A stretch of 64,000 nucleotides of DNA, from positions 124,001-188,000 of IMG/VR virus record IMGVR_UViG_3300033143_006101. One strand, written 5' to 3'. Both the position numbers and the translations under genes were made by a program. Below, in pieces: positions 12,310-56,968 of the stretch; positions within the stretch are counted from its first letter, which is position 1, and each line of letters begins with the position of its first letter. A model generated the notes under the pieces. That model did no database searches. It saw nothing but the letters and a program-made list of their open reading frames with translations, and was not told the origin of the DNA.

Positions 12310-12516
12310 TAGGAGGTGCTAGTTATGCCAACATGTTTGCCAATATTTTTCATAGGAATGCTTGTAGGATTGATTATAGGCTATGTGTTAAAGCACATAG
12401 AAGTAAGCAGAAAAAAGGCAAAGTTTTATGATGGCACTGGAAAGTCCATGCCTATGTAATTTACCTTAAAGTTCTTCCAGTAACAACTATCATTTAAGAA
12501 ATAGTGGGGTGTTGAT

Positions 12517-36715: not shown

Positions 36716-37219
36716 TCATATCTCCACTTTTATAATTTCTCCTTCAGGAGATAGCTCAGCTTCAATAGGATCCTCAAAGTCAGCCATCATACCTTCATAT
36801 ACTCCTTGCCATGTCTCTCTACTCTGCCCTTTAGGATCATTCATTCTATTATCAACATTATTCTGAGTCTCAGTAAAATGAACTAATACTATCTTCATAT
36901 TCACACCACGATCTTGCCGAGCCATATCTACCAAATCTATCCAATCAAGTCTCTTCTTTCTAATAATATTCGTTTCATCTATAATAATATTAAAACCATA
37001 ATCGAATGCTGTTGTCACAATATCATAACAAGCTGATCGTATAAATGGTTCATACTTTTTATCAAAAACATACTTCCCTTTTATCATTGCTCTAAGAGAA
37101 TCTCTATTTACAATCACAACATTGTCCTCTTTAGCTTTTTCTTTAGCCCAGGTACTTTTTCCAGAACCTATTATACCACATAATATATAAACAGTTACAT
37201 CAGGTGTGTTTTCACTCAT
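36716..37219 (-). CDS. P-loop kinase (AAA_33, polynucleotide kinase-like)
   Basis: GIIGSGKST, NRDSLR, IIDETN. Confidence 0.8.
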   Translation of the reverse strand: MSENTPDVTVYILCGIIGSGKSTWAKEKAKEDNVVIVNRDSLRAMIKGKYVFDKKYEPFIRSACYDIVTTAFDYGFNIIIDETNIIRKKRLDWIDLVDMARQDRGVNMKIVLVHFTETQNNVDNRMNDPKGQSRETWQGVYEGMMADFEDPIEAELSPEGEIIKVEI

Positions 37220-42964: not shown

Positions 42965-44617
42965 TTATTTTAATTTTATAGACTCATACCACCGTGGGAG
43001 TTCAAGAAGAGGAGTACCCATAATGTCATCAATTATAGACATTGCTCCCCTCATAGCATCCCGTACTGCTTGAGCTACTAAAGCACTTTCAGTTAATGTA
43101 TTAGGATCCACTCTACTAACAGGTATTCCTACAGCTTCGAGAGAATCAGATAGCCTTTCTCTACGAGTAGTAATTGTTCCTGGTGGAAACATTATTACCA
43201 CTGCAGCTTTAGGGCGACCAAGCCCCTTCTCATCACAGTTTTCAACTATTTGTCTGATAACACCAGTATTGTGATCTTCATCTGTAAGATAAATATCAAT
43301 TTCACAATTTAATTTACGAGCATCTTCATACCATGACAAACAATTTGTTCCATGACCACCACAATGAATACCATACAACCTTGCCATGAATGCATCCTTT
43401 TCAAATGTTTCAGGTAGATCTAACTCCCTCTTATCATCATCAAATAATCCCCAATGAAAATTCTCTTCTGGATTCTTAATGCATTCTGCTATAATAGAAC
43501 CACGTTCCTTAGCAAAGTTAATTGCATGCATCATAGAAGGGCTTGCATCTATATGAACAAACACTTTACCAAGATCACCTACAATTTCTTTTCTTTTGTC
43601 AGCACGAGCTTTCTTAAGTTCTTTACTAACATCTGCATCTACTTCAGTAGTAATTTTATCTACACGATCTAAAGCAGTCTTAGCAGTTTTAATCTTCTCT
43701 GTAAAGACTTCCATTATTTCCTTATCTTTAAGCAAACCTTCTTTATCAAAAAGTTCACGATAAATAACTGCTTGATCACCACTACATTGTTCAAGTACTG
43801 CAGCTGCAATAACTGGCGATATCTTTTTATTCAAAGCACCCAGTACACCCTGAGGTTTTAACTTCTCCTCACGGATCTTTTCTGCTATTGCAAGATCACT
43901 AAGCCCCTTGAAATTAAAGATTTCACTTTTCTCCGCAACTCTTCCGTCCTTTTGATCCCATCCAAACACAGCAACGGCTTCATCAGAAGGAGCTATATGC
44001 AAAGCCCTATACATATTCAACATAATCTTAGTAAAAGCTGCTTTTTTAATTCCTTCCAAAGCTTTTGGATTCTGTTCACGAAAACGAATATACTTCTTAC
44101 ATGCATTTTTAAGACTACGAGCGAAGTGTGTACCTTCTTTATACCTTGCACCAAGTGGCATCTTGAGATTTGCTATCGTAATCAAACGAGACACTAACTT
44201 TGGATCCATAGTTAATACAGCAGCCTGGGCAACTCTACGATAATTAGGTTTTTTATAATCACTGCCTTCTGAGAAAGGTGTACCATCTGCATCACTCAAA
44301 GAATTGATAAATGTAGATAGAACTTTTAAATCCTTTCCATCAGATTTAGTTATAGCCCAGCTGTTAAAATGAGCTAAAAAGACAGGATCTTGATCAGCAA
44401 GAGTTATAAAAGTATCAAGTATAGGTTGTAACCTTTGCTCTTGTACTTCAGGCACTTCTGTTATAGTCCCATCTGGATTACGCCGTTTTCTCATAATAGT
44501 CTGTCCATTCTGCAGGGTGTTCTTAGACCATACATGTGTACATCCACTGATAATTGTTTTATAAACATCTAAACGAGTTTCGTCGTTCAGATAAGCGAGT
44601 TGATTCTCTTGTGCCAT
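42965..44617 (-). CDS. Ro60/Rsr-like TROVE-vWA RNA-binding protein
   Basis: helical N-terminus with 'DPVFLAH', 'RSLKNA', 'RALHIAP'; C-terminal vWA MIDAS DASPS...T...TD; Y-RNA-like gene directly upstream. Confidence 0.7.
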   Translation of the reverse strand: MAQENQLAYLNDETRLDVYKTIISGCTHVWSKNTLQNGQTIMRKRRNPDGTITEVPEVQEQRLQPILDTFITLADQDPVFLAHFNSWAITKSDGKDLKVLSTFINSLSDADGTPFSEGSDYKKPNYRRVAQAAVLTMDPKLVSRLITIANLKMPLGARYKEGTHFARSLKNACKKYIRFREQNPKALEGIKKAAFTKIMLNMYRALHIAPSDEAVAVFGWDQKDGRVAEKSEIFNFKGLSDLAIAEKIREEKLKPQGVLGALNKKISPVIAAAVLEQCSGDQAVIYRELFDKEGLLKDKEIMEVFTEKIKTAKTALDRVDKITTEVDADVSKELKKARADKRKEIVGDLGKVFVHIDASPSMMHAINFAKERGSIIAECIKNPEENFHWGLFDDDKRELDLPETFEKDAFMARLYGIHCGGHGTNCLSWYEDARKLNCEIDIYLTDEDHNTGVIRQIVENCDEKGLGRPKAAVVIMFPPGTITTRRERLSDSLEAVGIPVSRVDPNTLTESALVAQAVRDAMRGAMSIIDDIMGTPLLELPRWYESIKLK

Positions 44618-44645
44618 AATAGTCTCCTCCCAAAATAATTTGTAA

Positions 44646-44780
44646 ATGGCAGTTCAAGTTGTAAAAATAGTTTTTTCAGTCCTCAAAACTGATGCTCTAC
44701 CCAACTGAGCTAATTACCGAATGGTTGGTAATGAGAGATTTGAACTCTCGGCTTGTATATTCTTACGATGGAACTGCCAT
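44646..44780 (-). ncRNA. Y RNA-like 1: bulged-C stem enclosing a circularly permuted tRNA (T arm, closed acceptor, D arm, anticodon arm)
   Basis: AUGGCAGUUC(C)A/UGAACUGCCAU; gagag-UUCAAAU-cucuc; auuacc-aaccauuc-gguaau; UAGCUCAGUUGGGUAGAGC; ucagu-uuugagg-acuga. Confidence 0.85.
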
Positions 44781-44787
44781 ATATAAA

Positions 44788-45078
44788 TCATCCTGCTTCA
44801 CTATTAGGTATTACATAGATATTGTGTCTATCTTCAGCTCTATGAATCTTATATATCCAACCAGTCCTATCATCCTTTATGTCTTTATCAAATACTTCAA
44901 CAAGCACCGGGCGAATTGTCTCAAGAATTTCTTCATCCGTAGAATCAAAAGAAAGCCCCAAATCACTAAGATCCCTTTGATAATCCTGTCTTTGAATAGG
45001 TACAATAAGCTTGTTACGAGCACCATCATCAAGAGGCGTAAGCTCTATTGTTGCAGGAACATTATTTTCAGTTGTCAT
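44788..45078 (-). CDS. putative ubiquitin-like (beta-grasp) protein
   Basis: 96 aa, beta-beta-alpha-beta-beta pattern, ends IYVIPNSEAG; near E1 and JAB genes. Confidence 0.55.
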   Translation of the reverse strand: MTTENNVPATIELTPLDDGARNKLIVPIQRQDYQRDLSDLGLSFDSTDEEILETIRPVLVEVFDKDIKDDRTGWIYKIHRAEDRHNIYVIPNSEAG

Positions 45079-45665: not shown

Positions 45666-46703
45666 TTACTCCTTATCTTTTTTTTGAAATATTCCTTTTA
45701 TCTTATCCATTGTTTGTTGTATAATTAGCTTACCTAAAAATAATTTATTCAATAATCTAGTCGCTCTATCCTCTTCTACCATAAGATTTTTATAATTGCT
45801 ACGATTTGTACCCTCAAGTCGTTGATTCCTGTCTTTAGCATCCTTAATTATCTCCTTCATTAACTTGTTATCCATCTCAGGTATACGATCTAATTCATAT
45901 AAAGGATCTTCTGTCTTAACTACTTCTAGGAATTTATCAAGAGTCAAATCACAATGTTCATCAATCCAATCCATAATAAAATAGAGACGATCATGTAAAT
46001 ATTCTTGAACACCAAATAAAATTGGATCCTTTTCCTTAATTTTCTTCTTAGTTGTTTTTACTTCTTTCTCTAGTTTCTTTCCAGTAGCCTTTTCTTGTTC
46101 CTTTTCTTCTTTAGTTTGTACCTTACCTTTATGATCCCCATATAATATTAAATAAGTATCAAACAAATTTAATTGCTTAAAATTTTTCAATGCCTTCTGT
46201 ACTTTTGCAGGCAATACTCTCGGATAATCTTCAAGTTTATCCAACTTAACTTCAACATCACGAACATTATGCATGAATCTTTCAACTACAGCTCTATCAA
46301 TTATATATTCTATACCACAAGCTAAAATCTCTGATTCTCTAACAGTAACTGCTAATTGAAAAGCAAACTCCTCATACAATGCCTGTTGTCCACTAAACTT
46401 GGCTTGCATTACCAGTGCTTTTAACTTCTCTAGTCGTTCTTGGAGTCTGACTTGCTGAAGTTTTGTAAGTTTACTTTTTACAAATTTAAAATAAAATTTT
46501 AAAGGAGCTTTTCTACTCTTAGGATACCTGCCATTTCGAATAGCGTGTATTTCGGAATCGCTGGCACCGGATGAAGGGGCAAATGGTTCGTAAACATTAC
46601 TACCCCATTCAAGACCACTTGCCGTGTGTATTTCAATATTAATAGGTGATGTGTCTATAGTACCAAAAGTACTTATATTAGCAGTATTATATATTCTAGA
46701 CAT
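45666..46703 (-). CDS. hypothetical protein
   Basis: 345-aa ORF with AGGAGGAGG RBS; 'KDPILFG...RLYFIMDW'. Confidence 0.7.
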   Translation of the reverse strand: MSRIYNTANISTFGTIDTSPINIEIHTASGLEWGSNVYEPFAPSSGASDSEIHAIRNGRYPKSRKAPLKFYFKFVKSKLTKLQQVRLQERLEKLKALVMQAKFSGQQALYEEFAFQLAVTVRESEILACGIEYIIDRAVVERFMHNVRDVEVKLDKLEDYPRVLPAKVQKALKNFKQLNLFDTYLILYGDHKGKVQTKEEKEQEKATGKKLEKEVKTTKKKIKEKDPILFGVQEYLHDRLYFIMDWIDEHCDLTLDKFLEVVKTEDPLYELDRIPEMDNKLMKEIIKDAKDRNQRLEGTNRSNYKNLMVEEDRATRLLNKLFLGKLIIQQTMDKIKGIFQKKDKE

Positions 46704-47260: not shown

Positions 47261-47945
47261 GGAAACTTCCTCCTTAATATTAAACATGTTATAATAATAA
47301 AAACAATTAATAACCCATAACCAATAAATGTATATAACATTGTTGGCTCAGCACTAGAAAATAAAATAAATACAATAGCTGCACCTAAAATAGAACCATA
47401 AAAAAACAATCCAATTATTTCAATTTTTCTCATAGCCATTATTGAAATCATCTTGTATCTCTCTTATTTCTTTACCTAATCCTTTCATGAAGGATCCACC
47501 ACCAGATTTAGAAATTGTAGTGCATCCTTTAGTAAGCATTGAAATTATTACAACATAGCATAATATAATTAAAATCATACCTGCTAATGCAAAACCCTAT
47601 AATTTTATTCATTTTTCTTCAATCTCCTCCACATGGTTCCATTTAACCAAAACAAGATCAAAAAATTTATCACGTTCTTCTTCTGTATGAAAAACACAGT
47701 CGATCAAATCACGAACACGACATATAGGTTTGCCCCTTTGCCTGATAGCAACATCATCACATGAAAACCATACCGCAGGGGGTTTTTCTTCCTTCGATAT
47801 GCTTGATGAGTCTAACCAAACGGAAACGCCTTTTAGAATTGATTCGGTATTAGGTAAGATCTTATCCAGATCTATAGCTCAATTAAGACATTCTACAATA
47901 TGCATCTCCAAGTAACCTCAAACTAATACAACTATTTATTTTTTA

Positions 47946-48087
47946 ACAGTAGTTCAAGTTGGTATATTTAAGCTGGATCAGTGGTAAGCCCGTATAACCC
48001 CAGGCCCCTGGGCTTTTAGTCCTTGCGAGACTACGTTGCTATAAACAACGCTTTTGTGCTTGTAAAATATACCTGTGGAACTACTGC
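47946..48087 (-). ncRNA. Y RNA-like 2: bulged-C stem enclosing a three-hairpin non-tRNA domain
   Basis: GCAGUAGUUC(C)A/UGAACUACUGU; ggUAUAUUU/AAAUAUAcc; UACAAGC motif. Confidence 0.75.
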
Positions 48088-48099
48088 AAATTTTCATTT

Positions 48100-48153
48100 C
48101 TAACTGTCCTAATAGGGAGGTCACGGAGGTCCTACAATAATTAGGACAGTTAG
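48100..48153 (-). ncRNA. hairpin RNA with 14-bp stem and two GACCUCC motifs in loop
   Basis: cuaacuguccuaau/auuaggacaguuag, located between Y2 and Y3. Confidence 0.45.
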
Positions 48154-48156
48154 AGT

Positions 48157-48232
48157 ATAGGGAGTCCAAGTTTATATTACACGTCAAGTAACCCGAAGAT
48201 AACTTGTAGGTAACATATATGAAACTCCCTAT
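48157..48232 (-). ncRNA. Y RNA-like 3: minimal 76-nt form
   Basis: AUAGGGAGUUU(C)A/UGGACUCCCUAU; UACAAG motif; AACUU 3' internal loop; abuts tRNA-Met 3' end. Confidence 0.7.
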
Positions 48233-48308
48233 TTGCAGGAGAGAGATTCGAACTCCCGTATGACCTTGGTTATGAGCCAAGCGACCTAGCCAGCTGGTCT
48301 ATCCTGCA
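48233..48308 (-). tRNA. tRNA with CAT anticodon (Met, or Ile2)
   Basis: TGCAGGA/TCCTGCA acceptor, cttgg-CTCATAA-ccaag, GTTCGAATC T-loop; CCA not encoded. Confidence 0.88.
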
Positions 48309-48596
48309 TTATTCCTTATTCCTTTTCTTCTTCCTTTTCTCTGCTTCTGAATCTGGCATTGCATCATGACATTTCTTACAATATACATCACACTTCTTAA
48401 TCTCTCTCAAAAATCTGTCAGGTGCCCAAGACCATATTCTATGATCTACTTTTTTACCAGGTTCTCTATGGTGAAGAGAAAGATTTTTTGTTGTGCCACA
48501 TCCTTTGCACTTCTTACCTTTATAAAACCTTTCCCTTCTTTTACGTAACCATTCTTTTTGATAGCTTTTTAAATCTTCCTTGTCTTTGTAGGGCAT
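48309..48596 (-). CDS. small HNH endonuclease
   Basis: CKGCG..NLSLHH...KCDVYCKKCH; inserted within the RNA cluster. Confidence 0.8.
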   Translation of the reverse strand: MPYKDKEDLKSYQKEWLRKRRERFYKGKKCKGCGTTKNLSLHHREPGKKVDHRIWSWAPDRFLREIKKCDVYCKKCHDAMPDSEAEKRKKKRNKE

Positions 48597-48603
48597 TAGT
48601 TTA

Positions 48604-48804
48604 TTAAGTCACACGAACCGCTACTGCTCGTGGTCCTTTATCTCCTTGCTCAGTATCAAATTCCACTGCATCTCCTTCATTTAATGTTTTAAATCCAGTA
48701 CCTTCAATACTACTATGATGTACAAAAATATCATTTCCATCATCATCTGTAATAAAACCAAAACCTTTTTTCTCGTTAAACCATTTTACTTTACCTTGCG
48801 ACAT
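48604..48804 (-). CDS. cspA: cold-shock domain protein
   Basis: [34 protein letters not shown]. Confidence 0.95.
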
Positions 48805-48853
48805 ATTTTTACCTCTATTGCTTAAATTCAACCCGTTGAATCCAACTGGTTAT

Positions 48854-48989
48854 TCGGGGAAGAAGGAGTTGAACCTTCGACATTCAGTTTCCAAATGCTT
48901 GTAAGATAATATTATGGGAACCTAAAAGGTTCAAGTTATACCATCTAGAAAACAACACACTGAGACTCTACCTACTGAGCTATTCCCCG
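48854..48989 (-). ncRNA. Y RNA-like 4: tRNA-Pro-like body with 63-nt Y module inserted in the anticodon loop
   Basis: CGGGGAA/UUCCCCG-A acceptor, D and T arms intact; insert 48896-48958 contains AACUUGAACC-uuuu-aGGUUCC and UACAAGC; UUUGGAA precedes the 3' anticodon strand. Confidence 0.8.
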
Positions 48990-48997
48990 TTTATTTT

Positions 48998-49128
48998 AAA
49001 GGAGTTCAAGTAATAGTTGCAATTAGTTTGCAAGTGAAAGATTTGAACTTTCGACCTAAAGTTTAATAGACTTTTGCTCTACCAACTGAGCTAATTTGCT
49101 TGTAAGCAACTATATAGGAAACTCCTTT
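48998..49128 (-). ncRNA. Y RNA-like 5: Y stem enclosing a complete unpermuted tRNA-like cloverleaf (49028-49100, anticodon ATT)
   Basis: AAAGGAGUUUCC/UGAACUCCUUU; auaguugc/gcaacuau; UAGCUCAGUUGGUAGAGC; aaagu-CUAUUAA-acuuu; gaaag-UUCAAAU-cuuuc. Confidence 0.8.
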
Positions 49129-49154
49129 AATTTTCCTTAAAAATATAAAATTAA

Positions 49155-49356: not shown

Positions 49357-49385
49357 AATATAATCAAGATACATAATATTGTCAA
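49357..49385 (-). promoter_or_regulatory. sigma70-type promoter heading the RHH / Y RNA / cspA unit
   Basis: TTGACA-17 bp-TATATT. Confidence 0.75.
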
Positions 49386-49415
49386 CAATTTTTTTAAAAA
49401 AATTACTAAAAGTGA

Positions 49416-49457
49416 TCCTGGGTAGTATATATATATATATATATATACTACCCAGGA
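49416..49457. repeat. perfect 42-bp palindrome with (TA)11 core
   Basis: tcctgggtag-(ta)11-ctacccagga. Confidence 0.9.
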
Positions 49458-49465
49458 CAACATTT

Positions 49466-50622
49466 TTACTTGCGGTACAGCGTCAGTTGAATCACTTCGT
49501 CTTTGAATTCTACAGCTTCACCGCGTAACAGTTTGCCATTCTTACCTTCTTCTTGAACTTCCCTAATCTCAATGATTTTAAAAGGAAGTTTTTGAGTCTC
49601 TCCGAAGATCACTTTCTCTTCAAATTTACAACCTAACTCCTTACCTATGAGTTTTTTTTTATCATCTCAGGTTTAAATTCAAAGATATTAGCCTCTTCTT
49701 TCTTTAGATAACTACTACCTTCTTTGGCAACTACATCTTCCTTTACTGCATTCCAAGAAGCAGGGAGATCATACACATCTACTCCCCTTATTTTATTCTC
49801 ATGAAGAAAAATAGCACCAACCTGATTCTCGATTGGTGGGATCTTCTTCATTACTTCTTTGATAAAAGCAGTCATGTCATCTAAAGCATCCACTAAGTCA
49901 TCAGACGCAGGAATATCCTCTATGTTCTCATCTGATGACTTGGATATTCTATTACGCCCTATTGGTGGTAGTCCAGATGGTCCACATGAACCAGCTACCC
50001 CAACAGGAGCAGCGTCCACCTCATCTGAACTTGAATCCTCTGAAGAATCACATAATGTAGGCAATACTTCATTGTCCATATCACTTATATTACATGAAAA
50101 AGATCTTCGAACAGGATTATGCTTATAAGACTTGATACGATCACCTCTACCAGTCTGTGCAAGATAGACTGCATTGTGATTGCTAACAGAATCCCAAGTA
50201 CTTCCTTGGCTAGAGAGATCTACGTCGAAGGGTGCTCGTCCACTATATTTCATCTCTGCCCCTTTTTGAGTCGGTTTAGATTGATGCACACAGTGAACAT
50301 TAATGCGAGTACTCTTACCAGGCATGATAAGGTAACTATGAATAGCAACCCGTTCCTGGGCTTTACCTCTGAAGAGTTCACCTCTACTAATAAATACAGG
50401 CGTGCCCTCATTGTTCTGAACATAAAGATAGTTTACCTGTCCGGTATCTTCTACCTTAATATCCTATGCCTCAGCAAACGTAATGTATTTACGTTTCTTT
50501 TTTGACTTCCTTGTTATTGGCACGATAACGTTTAGTGATTCCTCACTCATTCTCCAAGCCTCGCCCAAGACGAATCCATTCTTCTCGCTTGAAACGGACT
50601 TGATAAATTGTTGTATTGATAT
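49466..50622 (-). pseudogene. ARPP-1/DUF6569-like protein, disrupted
   Basis: 'YITFAEA*DIKVEDTGQVNYL..N....VFI..GELFRGKAQER...INVHCV'; in-frame TAG at 50464-50466, frameshift in A9 run at ~49655, ATA at the expected start. Confidence 0.6.
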
Positions 50623-52259: not shown

Positions 52260-53168
52260 TCAAGAAACACAGGCTATCTCCTCCTCTACATCAAAACTAC
52301 TTCTATACATTTTCATGTCAGTTAAATCCAAATATTTTGAAAATGCTTCCGGATCGTAGAGAGAAACATTACAAAAATTATCTTCTGTTAGATAAGGATG
52401 AAAACCAGCTCCAAATGCAATTTTACTAATATCGCTTATCTCTGTTTTTAGTATCTTAAAAAGTTTATCAAATGCCAGGTCTTTACATACCGCCCTGCCC
52501 TGAGCTATATAAGGTAACAATACATAATACTCCGGAGTATCTCCATAAGTATTATAAACATTTAAAAAATATTCAATACTAGATTCATCAGAAATAATTA
52601 AATGGAAATTAGTATGTATTTTAGCATTCTGCAATAATGTAAATGCATTATTCCAATACTCTTCAAGATGAGGATGACAACTTATCGCTACCCCACCACA
52701 ATATAGTGATGTATAGTTCAATAAATGATCAAGTAGTGCAATAGGCCATTTAGCAAACAAACCATTGGTAGTATAATTAGGTGTTATATTAAGTTTATAA
52801 AATGCCATTAAGATTTTATTAAAATCAGGATGCATTGTTGGTTCCCCACCACCTATAGCTACCTGGAAAGGTCTTTGATTTTCATCCATCGAACCAAAAA
52901 ACTCATTTATCTTTTCCAAAGCATTTTCTGCATGCTTTCCATTCTTGTATGAACTTTGATAACACCAGGAGCAGCCACCTTCACACATATTTGTTATCTT
53001 TACATCATAAAACTCTGGATAAGGCAATTCACTTATATCTTGCTTTGGATCCATAGCTAATCTTAATGTTTTACCATTAAAGTACACCGCTTTGTAATTA
53101 CATTCTGAGAAATGCCGGGTCCTAATCATAGCATCTGTTCCTCCCATAAAATTGTCTTTTATCATCAT
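52260..53168 (-). CDS. radical SAM protein
   Basis: CEGGCSWC (CxxxCxxC), GGGEPTMHP, YTTNG. Confidence 0.92.
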   Translation of the reverse strand: MMIKDNFMGGTDAMIRTRHFSECNYKAVYFNGKTLRLAMDPKQDISELPYPEFYDVKITNMCEGGCSWCYQSSYKNGKHAENALEKINEFFGSMDENQRPFQVAIGGGEPTMHPDFNKILMAFYKLNITPNYTTNGLFAKWPIALLDHLLNYTSLYCGGVAISCHPHLEEYWNNAFTLLQNAKIHTNFHLIISDESSIEYFLNVYNTYGDTPEYYVLLPYIAQGRAVCKDLAFDKLFKILKTEISDISKIAFGAGFHPYLTEDNFCNVSLYDPEAFSKYLDLTDMKMYRSSFDVEEEIACVS

Positions 53169-55408: not shown

Positions 55409-56968
55409 ATGAACAAGCAAGATCTAAGGCAAGAGTTAATAGATGAATTTATAAAGATAGAAAAACAATTTAATAAGGAGAGTCCTGGTAGAAAAATCAC
55501 AAGAGATTACTTTAGACAACATACTAAATATCAAGAGAAGAGTTGGACTCACCTTTTTGGAAGCTTTAAAAGTTTTAAACAACTAGCTTCAACGCAAAAG
55601 GAAGTCACTAGAGAATCCATCCGAATTAAAAAGAATGATAGAAGAAAAGGTACAAAACGAAAATATTTTGTCACGTCAGCAATCTCAGGTGCAGAACTTG
55701 ACCAAGATTTTTTTCTTAGTGCTTTAAATTATTGTAAATTAACTAATACACGATTAGTTATACTTCCAATGCGGGGAGTAAAAGTATCAGATGCAGGATA
55801 TGCTGAAGAGTTACTTGAAAATGCAGACTACTTTGCAACTGAATATATTTTCAACAGTAATTTAGTAGCTAAAGATTTTCTTATCAATCCCCAAATGATG
55901 AATCCTCTAACTGGGTTGGATCGTTTTGGACAAAAGCACTATTCTCTTATAATTGCATCCCCAAAACAATTTATGAGGGTGGTACCTGTTAGTCACGAAA
56001 GTTATCCGCACACTATTCACAGTACTGGAAGCATAACAATACCAACATATGCGTCTACACGAGTTGGTAGACTAGCAGAACAAGATCATTGCCGTGGCGG
56101 TTTAATAGTAGAAATAGAAAATGATAAAATATTTCATATTAGACAAATCCAAGCAGATAAAAACGGTAACTTTTATGATCTAGGAACTTATTATACTAGA
56201 AAAGAATCCGAAGCAAGCAGAGTATCCGCAATTGTATTGGGAGACATGCATATAGGATTCGAATGCCCAACAGCTGTCAAAGCTTGGATGGAATGTATTA
56301 AAAAAACTAACCCCAAGTATATCATAATGCATGATATCTTCAATGCCCACAGTATTTCACACCATCATATTAATAATATAGAAAGACAAGTAAATAGAAA
56401 AAAAGAATTGAATACTTTAAAAAAGGAATTGAATGTTGTTGGTGAAACATTAAAAAAGTGGAGTGAAACATTTCCTGATAAGGAAATAATTGTGGTAAGA
56501 AGTAATCATGATGAAGCATTGGATAGATACTTATTCGAATGCAGGTATAAAGATGATTGGATCAACCATAGGCTGGCCCTTAGATTAGCAGCATGGTTAA
56601 TTAATGAAAAAAATCCATTAGAAGAATACATTACAACAATGTTTAATATTAAAAACATAAGATGGTTAAGAAGAGACAAGGATTATAAATTACATAATGT
56701 AATAATCAGTGCTCATGGGGATAAAAAGGCTTATGGAGCAGCAACAAATAATGTTCTAAATGCCGAATCATCCTATGGTAACGCTATCATAGCTCATTCC
56801 CATTCCCCTCAAGTTTATAGAAACGTATGGAGAGTAGGTACAACAACTGAGCTGATATTAGACTATAATAAAGGAGCCCCTTCTAACTGGCTCCATGCAA
56901 GCTGTCTATTATACAAAAGCCAACAAAGACAAATGATTACAGCAATAGAAGGCAATTGGAAAATATAA
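55409..56968 (+). CDS. calcineurin-like metallophosphoesterase domain protein
   Basis: GDMH, HDIF, SNHD, HGD, HSH. Confidence 0.8.
   Translation: MNKQDLRQELIDEFIKIEKQFNKESPGRKITRDYFRQHTKYQEKSWTHLFGSFKSFKQLASTQKEVTRESIRIKKNDRRKGTKRKYFVTSAISGAELDQDFFLSALNYCKLTNTRLVILPMRGVKVSDAGYAEELLENADYFATEYIFNSNLVAKDFLINPQMMNPLTGLDRFGQKHYSLIIASPKQFMRVVPVSHESYPHTIHSTGSITIPTYASTRVGRLAEQDHCRGGLIVEIENDKIFHIRQIQADKNGNFYDLGTYYTRKESEASRVSAIVLGDMHIGFECPTAVKAWMECIKKTNPKYIIMHDIFNAHSISHHHINNIERQVNRKKELNTLKKELNVVGETLKKWSETFPDKEIIVVRSNHDEALDRYLFECRYKDDWINHRLALRLAAWLINEKNPLEEYITTMFNIKNIRWLRRDKDYKLHNVIISAHGDKKAYGAATNNVLNAESSYGNAIIAHSHSPQVYRNVWRVGTTTELILDYNKGAPSNWLHASCLLYKSQQRQMITAIEGNWKI

What the first reader, a model, noticed from the sequence alone, without database searches (positions are those of the whole stretch)
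48854..48989. Y4: tRNA-Pro-like gene with the Y module inserted inside-out in its anticodon loop
Seen: a normal tRNA with C1-G72 and A73, intact D and T arms, and a 63-nt insert between positions 31 and 32. Removing the insert gives loop UUUGGAA (anticodon UGG, Pro, consistent with the G72/A73 identity elements). The insert holds the Y module in permuted order: the ACUUGAAC strand first, a short U-rich loop, then GUUCC and UACAAGC. An alternative 10-bp pairing (uuucuagaug/cauuuggaaa) would hide the anticodon. The anticodon stem ucagu/acuga is identical to that of Y1. Inference: either a Y RNA with free tRNA ends (RNase P/CCA-processed, possibly prolylated) or an unusual excisable tRNA insert.
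Basis: partly seen in the sequence, partly recalled or inferred. Interest (0 to 1): 0.85.

Follow-up and report, generated by a model that had tools for sequence, protein, structure and literature searches.

The report
tRNA carrying a Ro-type Y-RNA hairpin
A giant-phage gene encodes a normal-looking, open-ended tRNA whose anticodon loop is replaced by the conserved hairpin that marks the partner RNAs of the phage's own Ro60-like protein, so it is most likely a Y RNA built on an ordinary tRNA, not on the circularly permuted tRNA described so far.

Summary
On the minus strand (48989 to 48854) lies a 136-nt tRNA-like gene (Rfam tRNA 49 bits). ARAGORN in intron mode calls it tRNA-Pro(UGG) with a 63-nt insert after position 31.

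The insert belongs to a conserved, covarying RNA module. The window holds five copies within 4.5 kb, beside a divergent Ro60 gene (42965-44617) that Pfam misses. A covariance model built without this phage finds the insert at 43.6 bits.

Of 55 examined, 47 sit inside complete tRNA bodies: in the variable-arm position, between the D and anticodon arms, or, as here, inside the anticodon stem. Twelve of the 47 encode CCA.

The module folds as helix A, an internal loop holding ACUU, helix B, then an invariant UACAAGC.

Best reading: a Ro60-partner Y RNA with native tRNA ends, the unpermuted counterpart of YrlA, and not a decoding or spliced tRNA. Ro binding and processing are inferred, not shown. 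I rate it a new variant of a known kind.

The parts
48854..48989 (-). Whole chimeric RNA gene (Y4): a tRNA-Pro-like cloverleaf with a 63-nt Y-module hairpin inside the anticodon stem
   Evidence: Rfam tRNA 49 bits. ARAGORN in intron mode: Pro(tgg), intron at position 32, 63 nt. Fold z = -3.5.
48983..48989 (-). Acceptor stem 5' strand CGGGGAA. It pairs with 48855-48861 (UUCCCCG); the discriminator A73 is at 48854.
   Evidence: Acceptor pairs show compensatory changes among the five type-c homologues.
48965..48980 (-). D arm (GCUC AGUAGGUA GAGU)
48959..48963 (-). Anticodon-stem 5' strand UCAGU. It pairs with ACUGA at 48884-48888 across the insert.
   Evidence: pair probabilities 0.8-0.9. Compensatory changes among homologues.
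48896..48958 (-). The 63-nt insert, a hairpin-form Y module
   Evidence: Model R2, built without this phage, scores it 43.6 bits, E about 9e-7. R1 scores it 49.8 bits.
48938..48946 (-). Helix B, first strand AGAUGGUAU. It pairs with AUAUUAUCU at 48904-48912.
   Evidence: Pair probabilities 0.88-1.0. All 9 pairs show compensatory changes across 66 homologues.
48933..48936 (-). ACUU, which lies in the internal loop between helices B and A. ACU is invariant and the fourth base is U or C.
   Evidence: ACU is invariant in alignments A2 and A4. Unpaired in the fold. It occupies the same place as the ACUUG of the Rfam YrlA consensus.
48918..48932 (-). Helix A, GAACCU / AGGUUC, closed by a UUU loop. 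In the linear Y RNAs this helix carries the 5' and 3' ends.
   Evidence: All 6 pairs covary, 93.5% of cells paired.
48913..48917 (-). CCAUA, the 5'-strand side of the internal loop, starting with the C that follows helix A in most modules
48897..48903 (-). UACAAGC motif. Its ACA and final C are invariant. In this RNA, AAGCA (48896-48900) is predicted to pair with UGUUU at 48950-48954 (helix C).
   Evidence: invariant columns; pair probabilities 0.75-0.88.
48889..48895 (-). UUUGGAA, the remnant of a tRNA-Pro anticodon loop. It now forms the 3' side of a 4 x 7 internal loop.
   Evidence: Not conserved in the type-c homologues.
48862..48878 (-). T arm (GAAGG UUCAACU CCUUC)
48996..49135 (-). Linear Y module whose helices A and B enclose a tRNA-like domain (ARAGORN tRNA-Asn(att), 49028-49100). 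Its 3' strand ends 8 nt before C1 of Y4.
   Evidence: (z = -4.4).
48150..48232 (-). Mini Y RNA of 83 nt, immediately after tRNA-Met (48233-48308)
   Evidence: (z = -4.7).
47943..48092 (-). Linear Y RNA whose inner domain is not tRNA-like
   Evidence: (z = -4.5).
44643..44786 (-). YrlA-like Y RNA: a permuted tRNA-like domain with a closed acceptor hairpin, directly upstream of the Ro60-like gene
   Evidence: Rfam YrlA 29.1 bits, E 4e-4, below the gathering score of 69. Fold z = -5.2..
42965..44617 (-). Divergent Ro60 (TROVE plus vWA) protein of 550 aa, the presumed protein partner
   Evidence: The family profile matches human RO60 at E 7e-7. AF2 model pLDDT 82. The top 11 PDB fold matches are all Ro60/TROVE. 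No Pfam hit.
49357..49385 (-). Best sigma-70-like promoter match (TTGACA, 17 nt, TATATT), upstream of Y3, Y4, csp, HNH, tRNA-Met and the two further Y RNAs. It is a consensus match only.
   Evidence: The total number of promoter-like sites is no higher than in shuffles.

Best explanation
Y4 is a chimeric non-coding RNA of an uncultured jumbo phage. Its body is derived from tRNA-Pro and keeps native 5' and 3' acceptor ends. Its anticodon stem is extended by a rod about 60 nt long: helix C, helix B, an internal loop with ACUU opposite C-rich residues, and helix A capped by a loop. This rod is the hairpin form of the module found in the phage's four other Y-like RNAs.

Proposed mechanism:
1. It is transcribed with the neighbouring Y RNAs and tRNA-Met as part of one minus-strand cluster.
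2. It is cut out like a tRNA. RNase P cleavage at C1 would at the same time create the 3' end of the upstream Y RNA, followed by 3' trimming and CCA addition.
3. The hairpin is bound by the phage's Ro60-like protein at helix A and its internal loop.
4. The L-shaped tRNA part acts as the effector end, as proposed for YrlA, presenting a tRNA surface to tRNA-binding factors.

Because 70 nt lie between the two strands of the anticodon stem, it is not expected to decode.

What is shown: the tRNA body; the conserved, covarying module; its genomic linkage to the Ro60-like gene; and the recurrence of tRNA-module chimeras. What is inferred: transcription, processing, Ro60 binding and the effector role.
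For: 1. tRNA body. Rfam tRNA 49 bits; ARAGORN Pro(UGG) with a 63-nt insert; tertiary-interaction nucleotides intact (sequence).
2. Module is real. A model built without this phage scores the insert 43.6 bits. On 66 distinct homologues 87.7% of cells pair, against 32-45% when partners are slid, with 357 compensatory cells and every pair of helices A and B covarying.
3. Same module in this window. Five matched pairs of 5'-strand and 3'-strand motifs all lie on the minus strand between 44.6 and 49.1 kb. The other four RNAs fold as helix A, internal loop, helix B with z of -4.4 to -5.2.
4. Link to Ro.
- The adjacent 550-aa protein is Ro60-like by profile and by fold.
- The RNA directly upstream of it gives a weak YrlA match whose consensus has ACUUG at the same loop position.
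- All 67 hairpin hits in related loci are on the Ro-gene strand.
- Linear candidates number 114 on the Ro strand against 13 on the other.
- A pattern scan of 2.9 million viral contigs gave model-confirmed modules only on two Ro-encoding contigs.
5. tRNA-type maturation is plausible. 47 of 55 modules sit in bodies with a 7-bp acceptor stem and a canonical T loop, and 12 of 47 carry CCA at positions 74-76 where about 0.7 is expected.
6. The architecture is conserved. Five type-c RNAs from four lineages share acceptor stem, anticodon stem, helices C, B and A and the T stem, with compensatory changes. The L088 locus is syntenic.
7. Precedent. M. smegmatis YrlA is cut by RNase P and receives CCA in vivo (PMC4201824).
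Against: - There is no expression, end-mapping or binding data of any kind.
- The Ro-binding role of the module rests on linkage and on resemblance to YrlA and metazoan Y stems.
- The GNCGAA motif that Chen et al. use for bacterial Ro-binding stems is absent.
- Y4 gets no Rfam YrlA or Y_RNA hit.
- Helix A is capped by a loop and does not carry the RNA ends, and no known Ro-Y complex has that form.
- The same phage has three more module-bearing tRNAs about 70 kb from the Ro gene, in its main tRNA cluster. Tight linkage is therefore not obligatory, and a role in tRNA biology independent of Ro is possible.
- The related loci were fetched because they encode Ro, so co-occurrence is partly built into the sample.
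Confidence: 0.62

Rival explanations
1. Ro-tagged working tRNA. The RNA is matured, receives CCA and is charged (here by ProRS through G72, A73, G35 and G36). The module is a handle by which Ro60 stores, protects or delivers phage tRNAs, for example against host tRNA-cleaving defences.
For: - Most related chimeras keep a perfect 5-bp, 7-nt anticodon arm, usually with U33 and a purine at 37, and carry many different anticodons.
- 12 of 47 encode CCA.
- Three further copies lie inside the phage's main tRNA cluster.
- Y4 keeps C1-G72 and A73, and UGG sits in an open internal loop.
- C1 is specific to tRNA-Pro in these loci.
Against: - In Y4 itself the anticodon loop is broken, and UUUGGAA is not conserved in the type-c homologues.
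- A37 replaces the G37 that I recall as usual in tRNA-Pro (from memory, not tested).
- A helical arm of about 25 bp carrying a 60-kDa protein would probably not fit the ribosome (inference).
- Standard tRNAs with anticodons UUG and UGA, which two of the L095 chimeras appear to carry by my own reading, coexist in that cluster.
Confidence: 0.12
2. A functional chimeric RNA whose module binds something other than Ro60, such as the conserved 96-aa protein encoded just upstream of Ro, the cold-shock protein, or a host factor. The Ro linkage would then be only co-regulation.
For: - Binding has not been tested.
- A conserved 96-aa ORF lies between the Y RNAs and the Ro gene, 41% identical in L088.
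- A cold-shock-domain gene follows Y4 directly.
- Three module-bearing tRNAs lie far from the Ro gene.
- The bacterial GNCGAA Ro motif is absent.
Against: - The architecture (terminal helix, asymmetric internal loop with ACUUG, second helix, tRNA-like domain) is that of YrlA (10.1101/312249).
- One copy sits immediately 5' of the Ro start codon, as in bacterial rsr-yrlA loci.
Confidence: 0.15
3. An intron-containing tRNA-Pro. The 63-nt insert is excised and the halves are ligated to give a decoding tRNA-Pro(UGG). The released hairpin might itself be the Y RNA.
For: - Removing exactly 63 nt restores a 7-nt loop, UUUGGAA, with anticodon UGG.
- In type-a relatives, removing the module would leave a normal 4-6-nt variable loop.
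- The window encodes kinase-like and phosphoesterase-like proteins that could belong to RNA repair.
Against: - 63 nt is far too short for a group I intron, and there is no Rfam intron hit.
- The junctions form a 4 x 7 internal loop at position 31/32, not a bulge-helix-bulge at 37/38.
- Relatives carry tmRNA genes, so the hosts are bacteria, which lack the splicing endonuclease (established knowledge).
- The insert is the most conserved part, and the flanking 'loop' residues differ in every homologue and lie on different sides of the module.
- The same module works in linear RNAs with no tRNA to restore.
Confidence: 0.06
4. A decaying tRNA pseudogene with a junk insertion.
For: Default ARAGORN does not call it, and the anticodon loop is destroyed.
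Against: - The insert matches an independent covariance model at 43.6 bits.
- All stems are intact.
- The architecture recurs with compensatory changes in four phage lineages and, in other insertion positions, in dozens more.
Confidence: 0.03

Closest known systems
YrlA-type bacterial and phage Y RNAs (Rfam RF02553; Chen et al. 2014, PMC4201824; Wang et al. 2018, bioRxiv 10.1101/312249)
   Same: - Encoded beside a Ro60 gene.
- Two-part design: a bulged stem presumed to bind Ro, plus a tRNA-like domain with T arm, D arm and acceptor stem.
- The Ro stem continues from the anticodon stem, giving an elongated tRNA.
- ACUUG sits in the internal loop next to the terminal helix, as in the Rfam consensus.
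   Different: - The topology is reversed. YrlA is described as a circularly permuted tRNA with a loop-closed acceptor stem, no CCA end, and the RNA ends in the Ro stem. Y4 has open acceptor ends and a loop-closed Ro stem.
- No GNCGAA motif.
- No Rfam YrlA hit.
- An invariant UACAAGC motif not described for YrlA.
- The partner Ro60 is a divergent clade that Pfam does not detect.
[quoted passage not shown]
   Same: A Y RNA that ends up with a free, CCA-bearing tRNA-like acceptor end attached to a Ro-binding stem.
   Different: There the free end arises by cutting a closed loop, giving a two-piece RNA that also keeps open ends in the Ro stem. Here the open acceptor stem is encoded directly and the RNA is one piece.
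Metazoan Y RNAs (hY1-hY5, Xenopus Y RNAs)
   Same: A terminal helix with a bulged C on the 5' strand, and an ACUUGA-type sequence on the 3' strand next to the helix. This resemblance is from my own knowledge of the hY1 sequence and was not tested with a tool.
   Different: - No tRNA domain.
- The ends lie in the Ro-binding helix.
- No Rfam Y_RNA match here.
Yrl1 and Yrl2 of Thermus phage phiLo with phi-Ro60 (PMC12135203; PDB 9KOP, 9L5Y)
   Same: Phage-encoded Ro60 with several Y-like RNAs encoded just upstream. Both phiLo Ro60 structures (9KOP, rank 1; 9L5Y, rank 5) are among the top five fold matches of the window's protein.
   Different: The phiLo RNAs were identified through a CGAA motif and are not described as complete tRNAs with an inserted hairpin.
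Class II tRNAs (Leu, Ser, Tyr) with long variable arms
   Same: An extra helical arm emerges from the tRNA core. 20 of the related chimeras carry the module exactly in the variable-arm position.
   Different: - Class II arms are about 10-20 nt and serve synthetase recognition. The module is about 55-65 nt, with its own conserved motifs.
- In Y4 it is in the anticodon loop, not the variable region.
Intron-containing tRNAs (bacterial or phage group I; archaeal bulge-helix-bulge)
   Same: A tRNA gene interrupted in the anticodon loop. Excising the insert would restore a 7-nt loop.
   Different: No ribozyme core, no bulge-helix-bulge, a non-canonical position (31/32), and an insert that is conserved and shared with RNAs that are not tRNAs.

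Membership tests
Y RNA of the YrlA type (RF02553) | Encoded close to, and on the same strand as, a Ro60/Rsr gene | tested here: met
   Y4 lies 4.2 kb upstream of the Ro60-like ORF 42965-44617, on the same strand, inside a cluster of five Y-like RNAs.
Y RNA of the YrlA type (RF02553) | Ro-binding module: a terminal helix, an asymmetric internal loop with conserved nucleotides, and a second helix | tested here: met
   Helix A, a loop with ACUU opposite C-rich residues, and helix B; both helices covary. The Rfam YrlA consensus has ACUUG in the equivalent loop.
Y RNA of the YrlA type (RF02553) | GNCGAAN0-1G motif on the 5' strand of the Ro-binding stem (Chen et al. 2014) | tested here: not met
   No such motif in the insert, and it is not conserved in the 40-sequence module alignment.
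Y RNA of the YrlA type (RF02553) | tRNA-like domain (T arm, D arm, acceptor-like stem) | tested here: met
   Rfam tRNA 49 bits over model positions 1-71.
Y RNA of the YrlA type (RF02553) | Circularly permuted topology: RNA ends in the Ro stem, acceptor stem closed by a loop, no free CCA end (10.1101/312249) | tested here: not met
   The opposite holds: the acceptor stem is open and helix A is closed by UUU.
Y RNA of the YrlA type (RF02553) | Reaches the Rfam gathering score | tested here: not met
   No YrlA hit for Y4 at gathering score or at E up to 10. The neighbour at 44673-44777 scores 29.1 against the required 69.
Y RNA of the YrlA type (RF02553) | Physical association with Ro60 | not testable with these tools
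   Needs a pull-down or gel-shift assay.
Decoding tRNA-Pro(UGG) | Cloverleaf with 7-bp acceptor stem, D and T arms, and the conserved tertiary nucleotides | tested here: met
   U8, A14, G18G19, U54-U55-C56, A58 and the G15/C48 pair are read from the sequence.
Decoding tRNA-Pro(UGG) | C1-G72 and A73, the acceptor signature of bacterial tRNA-Pro | tested here: met
   Present. In these loci 8 of 9 tRNA-Pro genes start with C, against 12 of 282 others.
Decoding tRNA-Pro(UGG) | A 7-nt anticodon loop closed by the 5-bp anticodon stem | tested here: not met
   70 nt lie between the two strands. The UGG triplet is on one side of a 4 x 7 internal loop.
Decoding tRNA-Pro(UGG) | Anticodon conserved in homologous genes | tested here: not met
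   The residues between the anticodon stem and the module differ in all type-c homologues and lie on different sides of the module.
Intron-containing tRNA | Self-splicing group I core | tested here: not met
   The insert is only 63 nt. No intron family appears in the Rfam scans.
Intron-containing tRNA | Bulge-helix-bulge motif at the exon-intron junctions, usually at position 37/38 | tested here: not met
   The junctions are at 31/32 and 94/95 and flank a 4 x 7 internal loop followed by a 5-bp helix.
Ro60 / TROVE protein (partner ORF 42965-44617) | HEAT-repeat ring plus a C-terminal vWA domain with a DxSxS MIDAS motif | tested here: met
   - The top 11 PDB fold matches are all Ro60/TROVE, TM about 0.5.
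- The family profile matches human RO60 at E 7e-7, collinear.
- D357, S359 and S361 are invariant.
Ro60 / TROVE protein (partner ORF 42965-44617) | Match to Pfam TROVE (PF05731) or vWA_Ro60 at threshold | tested here: not met
   No Pfam hit for the window protein. Relatives reach only sub-threshold vWA_Ro60 scores, 25.5 against 27.7 bits.

The most novel reading that the evidence does not exclude
These jumbo phages may attach a Ro60-binding arm to otherwise complete, CCA-ended, chargeable tRNAs of many specificities. Y4 would be the tRNA-Pro-derived member with the arm in the anticodon loop. Ro60 would then be recruited directly onto the tRNA pool, for example to shield phage tRNAs from host anticodon nucleases, to act as decoys for them, or to hold them for repair. 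That would give Ro60-Y RNPs a defined substrate class, tRNA, and show how Y RNAs can arise from tRNAs by grafting a module onto them, without circular permutation of a tRNA dimer.
Probability: 0.15. Interest if true: 0.9.

Novelty: new variant of a known kind. Interest (0 to 1): 0.72.

Why it matters
The tRNA-mimicking Y RNAs described in the papers I could read are circularly permuted tRNAs without a free acceptor end. What their tRNA-like domain does is still open.

This locus, and at least 47 related genes, show the same kind of presumed Ro-binding module grafted at three different sites onto ordinary tRNA frames. Some of these have an encoded CCA and an intact anticodon arm. They accompany a large Ro60 clade found so far only in phage and metagenome contigs, which domain databases miss.

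If Ro60 binds them, the question 'what does the tRNA half of a Y RNA do?' becomes directly testable. The natural variants differ in exactly the informative features: open or closed acceptor stem, and intact or disrupted anticodon. It would also suggest a simple evolutionary route from tRNA to Y RNA.

In practice, tRNA finders either skip these genes or call them intron-containing tRNAs, so phage tRNA inventories are affected.

Tried and rejected
1. Its pair probability is about 0, it breaks the covarying helix B, and it is absent from the L088 homologue.
2. ACUU pairing with UACAAG is topologically incompatible with helix B, which covaries.
3. A possible sixth module at 12357-12423 (minus strand; R1 22.5 bits, E 0.02) has no helix B and lies inside a plus-strand ORF with its own ribosome-binding site. 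I treat it as chance.
4. Rfam Y_RNA or YrlA matches for Y4 and for the 47930-48240 region: none, even at E up to 10.
5. Close relatives among 50,697 deposited phage genomes. By DNA only the cold-shock gene and the tRNAs match. By protein there are two remote hits at 22-24% identity.
6. Cellular genomes: one 2-kb MAG fragment among 185,579 species, so no host could be inferred.
7. Pattern scan of viral contigs. Three of the six loci (L093, L094, L097) had no Ro gene, no tRNA and no significant model hit, and are chance pattern matches, as the expected background suggested.
8. Isotype assignment by overall similarity to 291 phage tRNAs was uninformative, since all were about 67-72% identical. 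Only C1-G72 and A73 point to Pro.
9. Two review articles (PMC10870794, PMC6047535) and PMC6542706 are not held, so I could not check them for a prior description. The P0003 contig returned no DNA.
Full report
**What is there**

The feature lies on the minus strand, read from 48989 down to 48854. Rfam's tRNA model matches it end to end at 49.0 bits, E 1.9e-7 for the window, with 68 nt inserted in the anticodon loop. ARAGORN misses it by default. With introns allowed it reports tRNA-Pro(tgg), a 73-nt body and a 63-nt insert between positions 31 and 32, leaving the loop UUUGGAA.

The sequence shows C1-G72, A73, a perfect 7-bp acceptor stem, a D arm with GG, T loop UUCAACU and a 5-nt variable loop. 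The fold of the 136-mer is the cloverleaf plus one long hairpin, -41.3 kcal/mol, z = -3.5.

**Anatomy of the insert**

From the anticodon stem (UCAGU/ACUGA) outward the predicted structure is:
- a 4 x 7 internal loop; its 3' side is the old anticodon loop UUUGGAA
- helix C (UGUUU/AAGCA)
- a 3 x 3 loop
- helix B (AGAUGGUAU/AUAUUAUCU)
- a 5 x 5 internal loop (AACUU opposite CCAUA)
- helix A (GAACCU/AGGUUC), capped by UUU.

ACUU is therefore unpaired and does not pair with UACAAG.

**The same module elsewhere in the window**

Matched 5'-strand (UUC-C, 10-13 nt, UACAAG) and 3'-strand (ACUUG-RAC) motifs occur five times. All are on the minus strand between 44.6 and 49.1 kb. Besides Y4 they are:
- 44643-44786, a YrlA-like RNA
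- 47943-48092
- 48150-48232, a mini form
- 48996-49135, which encloses a tRNA-like domain that ARAGORN calls Asn(att).

All four fold as helix A, internal loop, helix B and an inner domain, with z of -4.4 to -5.2. In these four the RNA ends lie in helix A. In Y4 the order is circularly permuted, so helix A is capped and the tRNA ends are free.

**The neighbouring protein**

ORF 42965-44617 (550 aa) begins 26 nt after the first Y-like RNA. It has no Pfam or PHROG hit. More than 186 homologues exist, almost all unannotated and many on contigs above 100 kb.

- A profile of 30 of them matches human RO60, collinear, at E 7e-7.
- An AlphaFold model (pLDDT 82) has Ro60/TROVE structures as its top 11 PDB matches. 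These include Xenopus Ro, D. radiodurans Rsr and the Ro60 of Thermus phage phiLo.
- The DxSxS MIDAS residues are invariant.

The window is part of a 252,876-bp IMG/VR contig. The protein family is nearly absent from 185,579 species genomes and from 50,697 deposited phage records.

**Is the insert a conserved element?**

I collected 86 further loci around homologues of this protein (L002-L087). From 40 hairpin modules I built covariance model R1.

- R1 finds 67 hits at E up to 0.01 in 833 kb, every one on the strand of the Ro gene.
- By my reading of the coordinates, all lie within about 6 kb of the Ro gene.
- On the model alignment 87.7% of cells pair, against 32-45% when partners are slid. 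There are 357 compensatory cells, and all 15 pairs covary. An alignment fitted to the model leans towards its structure. The independent MAFFT alignment shows the same trend.
- Model R2, rebuilt without any sequence from this phage, still scores the Y4 insert 43.6 bits, E about 9e-7.
- ACU of ACUU, and ACA and the final C of UACAAGC, are invariant.

**The module is repeatedly grafted into tRNAs**

Of 55 hairpin modules examined, 47 lie in a complete tRNA-like body with a 7-bp acceptor stem and a canonical T arm. By a heuristic classification that includes some errors:

| Position of the module | Count |
|---|---|
| Variable-arm position, after an intact anticodon arm | 20 |
| Between the D arm and an intact anticodon arm | 14 |
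| Inside the anticodon stem, like Y4 | 5 |
| Unclassified | 8 |

Twelve of the 47 have CCA at positions 74-76, where chance expects about 0.7.

The five type-c RNAs come from the window, L088/L009, L011 and L012. They share one consensus structure, with compensatory changes in the acceptor, anticodon and T stems and in helices A and B. The residues between the anticodon stem and the module are not conserved. UUUGGAA is unique to the window, and in L088 the loop-like CUUUUGA lies on the other side of the module.

L088 (Ro 57% identical) is syntenic: a Y3-like RNA, a type-c chimera, a type-a chimera, a YrlA-like RNA, a conserved small ORF (41% identical over 96 aa), then Ro.

A pattern scan of all IMG/VR contigs made without reference to Ro returned six loci. 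Model-confirmed modules occurred only on two Ro-encoding contigs. One of those loci revealed three more module-bearing tRNAs in this phage's main tRNA cluster, about 70 kb from the Ro gene (L095 4376-5010).

Linear-type candidates number 114 on the Ro strand and 13 on the other, mostly 120-150 nt long.

**Interpretation**

The best-supported reading is that Y4 is a Y RNA, that is a partner RNA of the phage Ro60, built on an unpermuted tRNA-Pro frame.

The frame probably derives from tRNA-Pro. C1 occurs in 8 of 9 tRNA-Pro genes but in only 12 of 282 other tRNAs in these loci. A phage tRNA-Pro in L011 shares 6 of 7 acceptor pairs (my comparison of the sequence).

The intact tRNA core and acceptor stem, the CCA-encoding relatives, and the placement directly after another Y RNA (8 nt apart) and among tRNAs suggest tRNA-type maturation. 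RNase P cleavage at C1 would also create the 3' end of the upstream Y RNA. This is inferred.

Ro binding is inferred from three things: linkage, the shared module, and the architectural match to YrlA, whose Rfam consensus carries ACUUG in the same internal loop. With 70 nt between the anticodon-stem strands and no conserved anticodon, decoding is unlikely.

**Rival explanations**

- Splicing is unlikely. There is no group I core and no bulge-helix-bulge, the position is non-canonical, relatives of the phage carry tmRNA genes (so the hosts are bacteria), the insert is the conserved part, and the same module functions in RNAs that contain no tRNA.
- A pseudogene is contradicted by the comparative data.
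- A different binding partner for the module cannot be excluded.
- Real aminoacylation and a role as a Ro-tagged tRNA also cannot be excluded. This applies especially to the type-a and type-b relatives that keep a normal anticodon arm.

**Comparison with what is known**

Chen et al. 2014 (PMC4201824) found YrlA RNAs next to Ro60 in more than 250 bacteria and phages. They showed that M. smegmatis YrlA is cut by RNase P and receives CCA.

Wang et al. 2018 (10.1101/312249) describe YrlA as a close tRNA mimic that 'lacks a free CCA end'. They say it resembles a circularly permuted tRNA with a closed acceptor stem, its anticodon stem continuing into the Ro-binding module.

The phiLo study (PMC12135203) shows a phage Ro60 binding two Y-like RNAs encoded upstream.

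Y4 works like these RNAs in design but fails YrlA membership on topology, on the GNCGAA motif and on the Rfam score. Four full-text searches found no paper describing a Ro-type module inserted as a hairpin into an open-ended tRNA. Three papers I wanted to check are not held, so prior description cannot be ruled out.

**Verdict**

I rate it a new variant of a known kind, of real interest to RNA biologists. Everything about function awaits expression and binding experiments.

Noticed in passing
window 42965-44617 (-): A 550-aa protein with no Pfam or PHROG hit is a divergent Ro60 (TROVE plus vWA). It has more than 186 unannotated homologues, nearly all on phage or metagenome contigs. It is almost absent from 185,579 species genomes and from deposited phage records.
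   Followed up: yes
window 44643-44786 (-): A YrlA-like RNA (Rfam 29.1 bits, below threshold) with T arm, closed acceptor hairpin, D arm and a complete anticodon-like arm (loop UUUGAGG). It starts right after the stop codon of a 96-aa ORF and ends 26 nt before the Ro start codon.
   Followed up: partly
window 48996-49135 (-): The tRNA-Asn(att) called by ARAGORN and Rfam (49028-49100, 61 bits) has two acceptor-stem mismatches and an A34 anticodon, and is enclosed by Y-module helices A and B. It is probably the tRNA-like domain of a Y RNA and not a working tRNA. L088 6461-6600 is its counterpart.
   Followed up: partly
window 48150-48232 and 47943-48092 (-): Two further Y-like RNAs. One is an 83-nt mini form directly abutting tRNA-Met. 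The other is a 150-nt form whose inner domain consists of three hairpins that are not tRNA-like.
   Followed up: partly
L095 4376-5010 (same contig, about 240.7-241.4 kb, outside the window): Three more tRNA-like genes carrying the hairpin module in the variable-arm position sit inside the phage's main tRNA cluster (11 standard tRNAs in 10.6 kb), about 70 kb from the Ro gene. One has the same helix A and loop sequence as Y4.
   Followed up: partly
window 44788-45078 (-): A 96-aa ORF of unknown function just upstream of the YrlA-like RNA and the Ro gene. It is conserved in the same position in L088 (41% identity, E 8e-24). It may be a third component of the system.
   Followed up: partly
window 49645-50325 (-): A 226-aa protein with an ARPP-1 domain (PF20208). 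A 371-aa ARPP-1 protein also lies just upstream of the Ro homologue on the P0003 contig.
   Followed up: no
window 49415-49458: A 44-nt perfect palindrome with an (AT)n centre that looks like a terminator on both strands. It produces spurious weak matches to several miRNA families.
   Followed up: no
window 48604-48831 (-) and 48309-48596 (-): A cold-shock-domain protein gene directly follows Y4. An HNH endonuclease-like ORF lies between it and tRNA-Met, so protein genes are interleaved with the RNA genes in one minus-strand cluster.
   Followed up: no
window 45666-46703 (-): A 345-aa ORF matching a PHROG 'transposase' family (phrog_10081, E 1e-23) lies between the Ro-proximal Y RNA and the distal Y and tRNA cluster.
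   Followed up: no
window 36716-37219 (-), 55409-56968 (+), 52260-53168 (-): An AAA_33/KTI12-type kinase-like protein, a 519-aa calcineurin-like phosphoesterase and a radical-SAM protein. The first two could belong to an RNA end-healing or repair set, as has been discussed for jumbo phages that encode TROVE proteins.
   Followed up: no
window 12357-12423 (-): A weak match to the module model (22.5 bits) without helix B, inside a small plus-strand ORF. Judged to be chance.
   Followed up: yes
L003 2478-2779, L006 6098-6415: Related Ro-encoding phage contigs carry their own tmRNA genes and very large tRNA arrays (18-32 tRNAs within about 20 kb).
   Followed up: no
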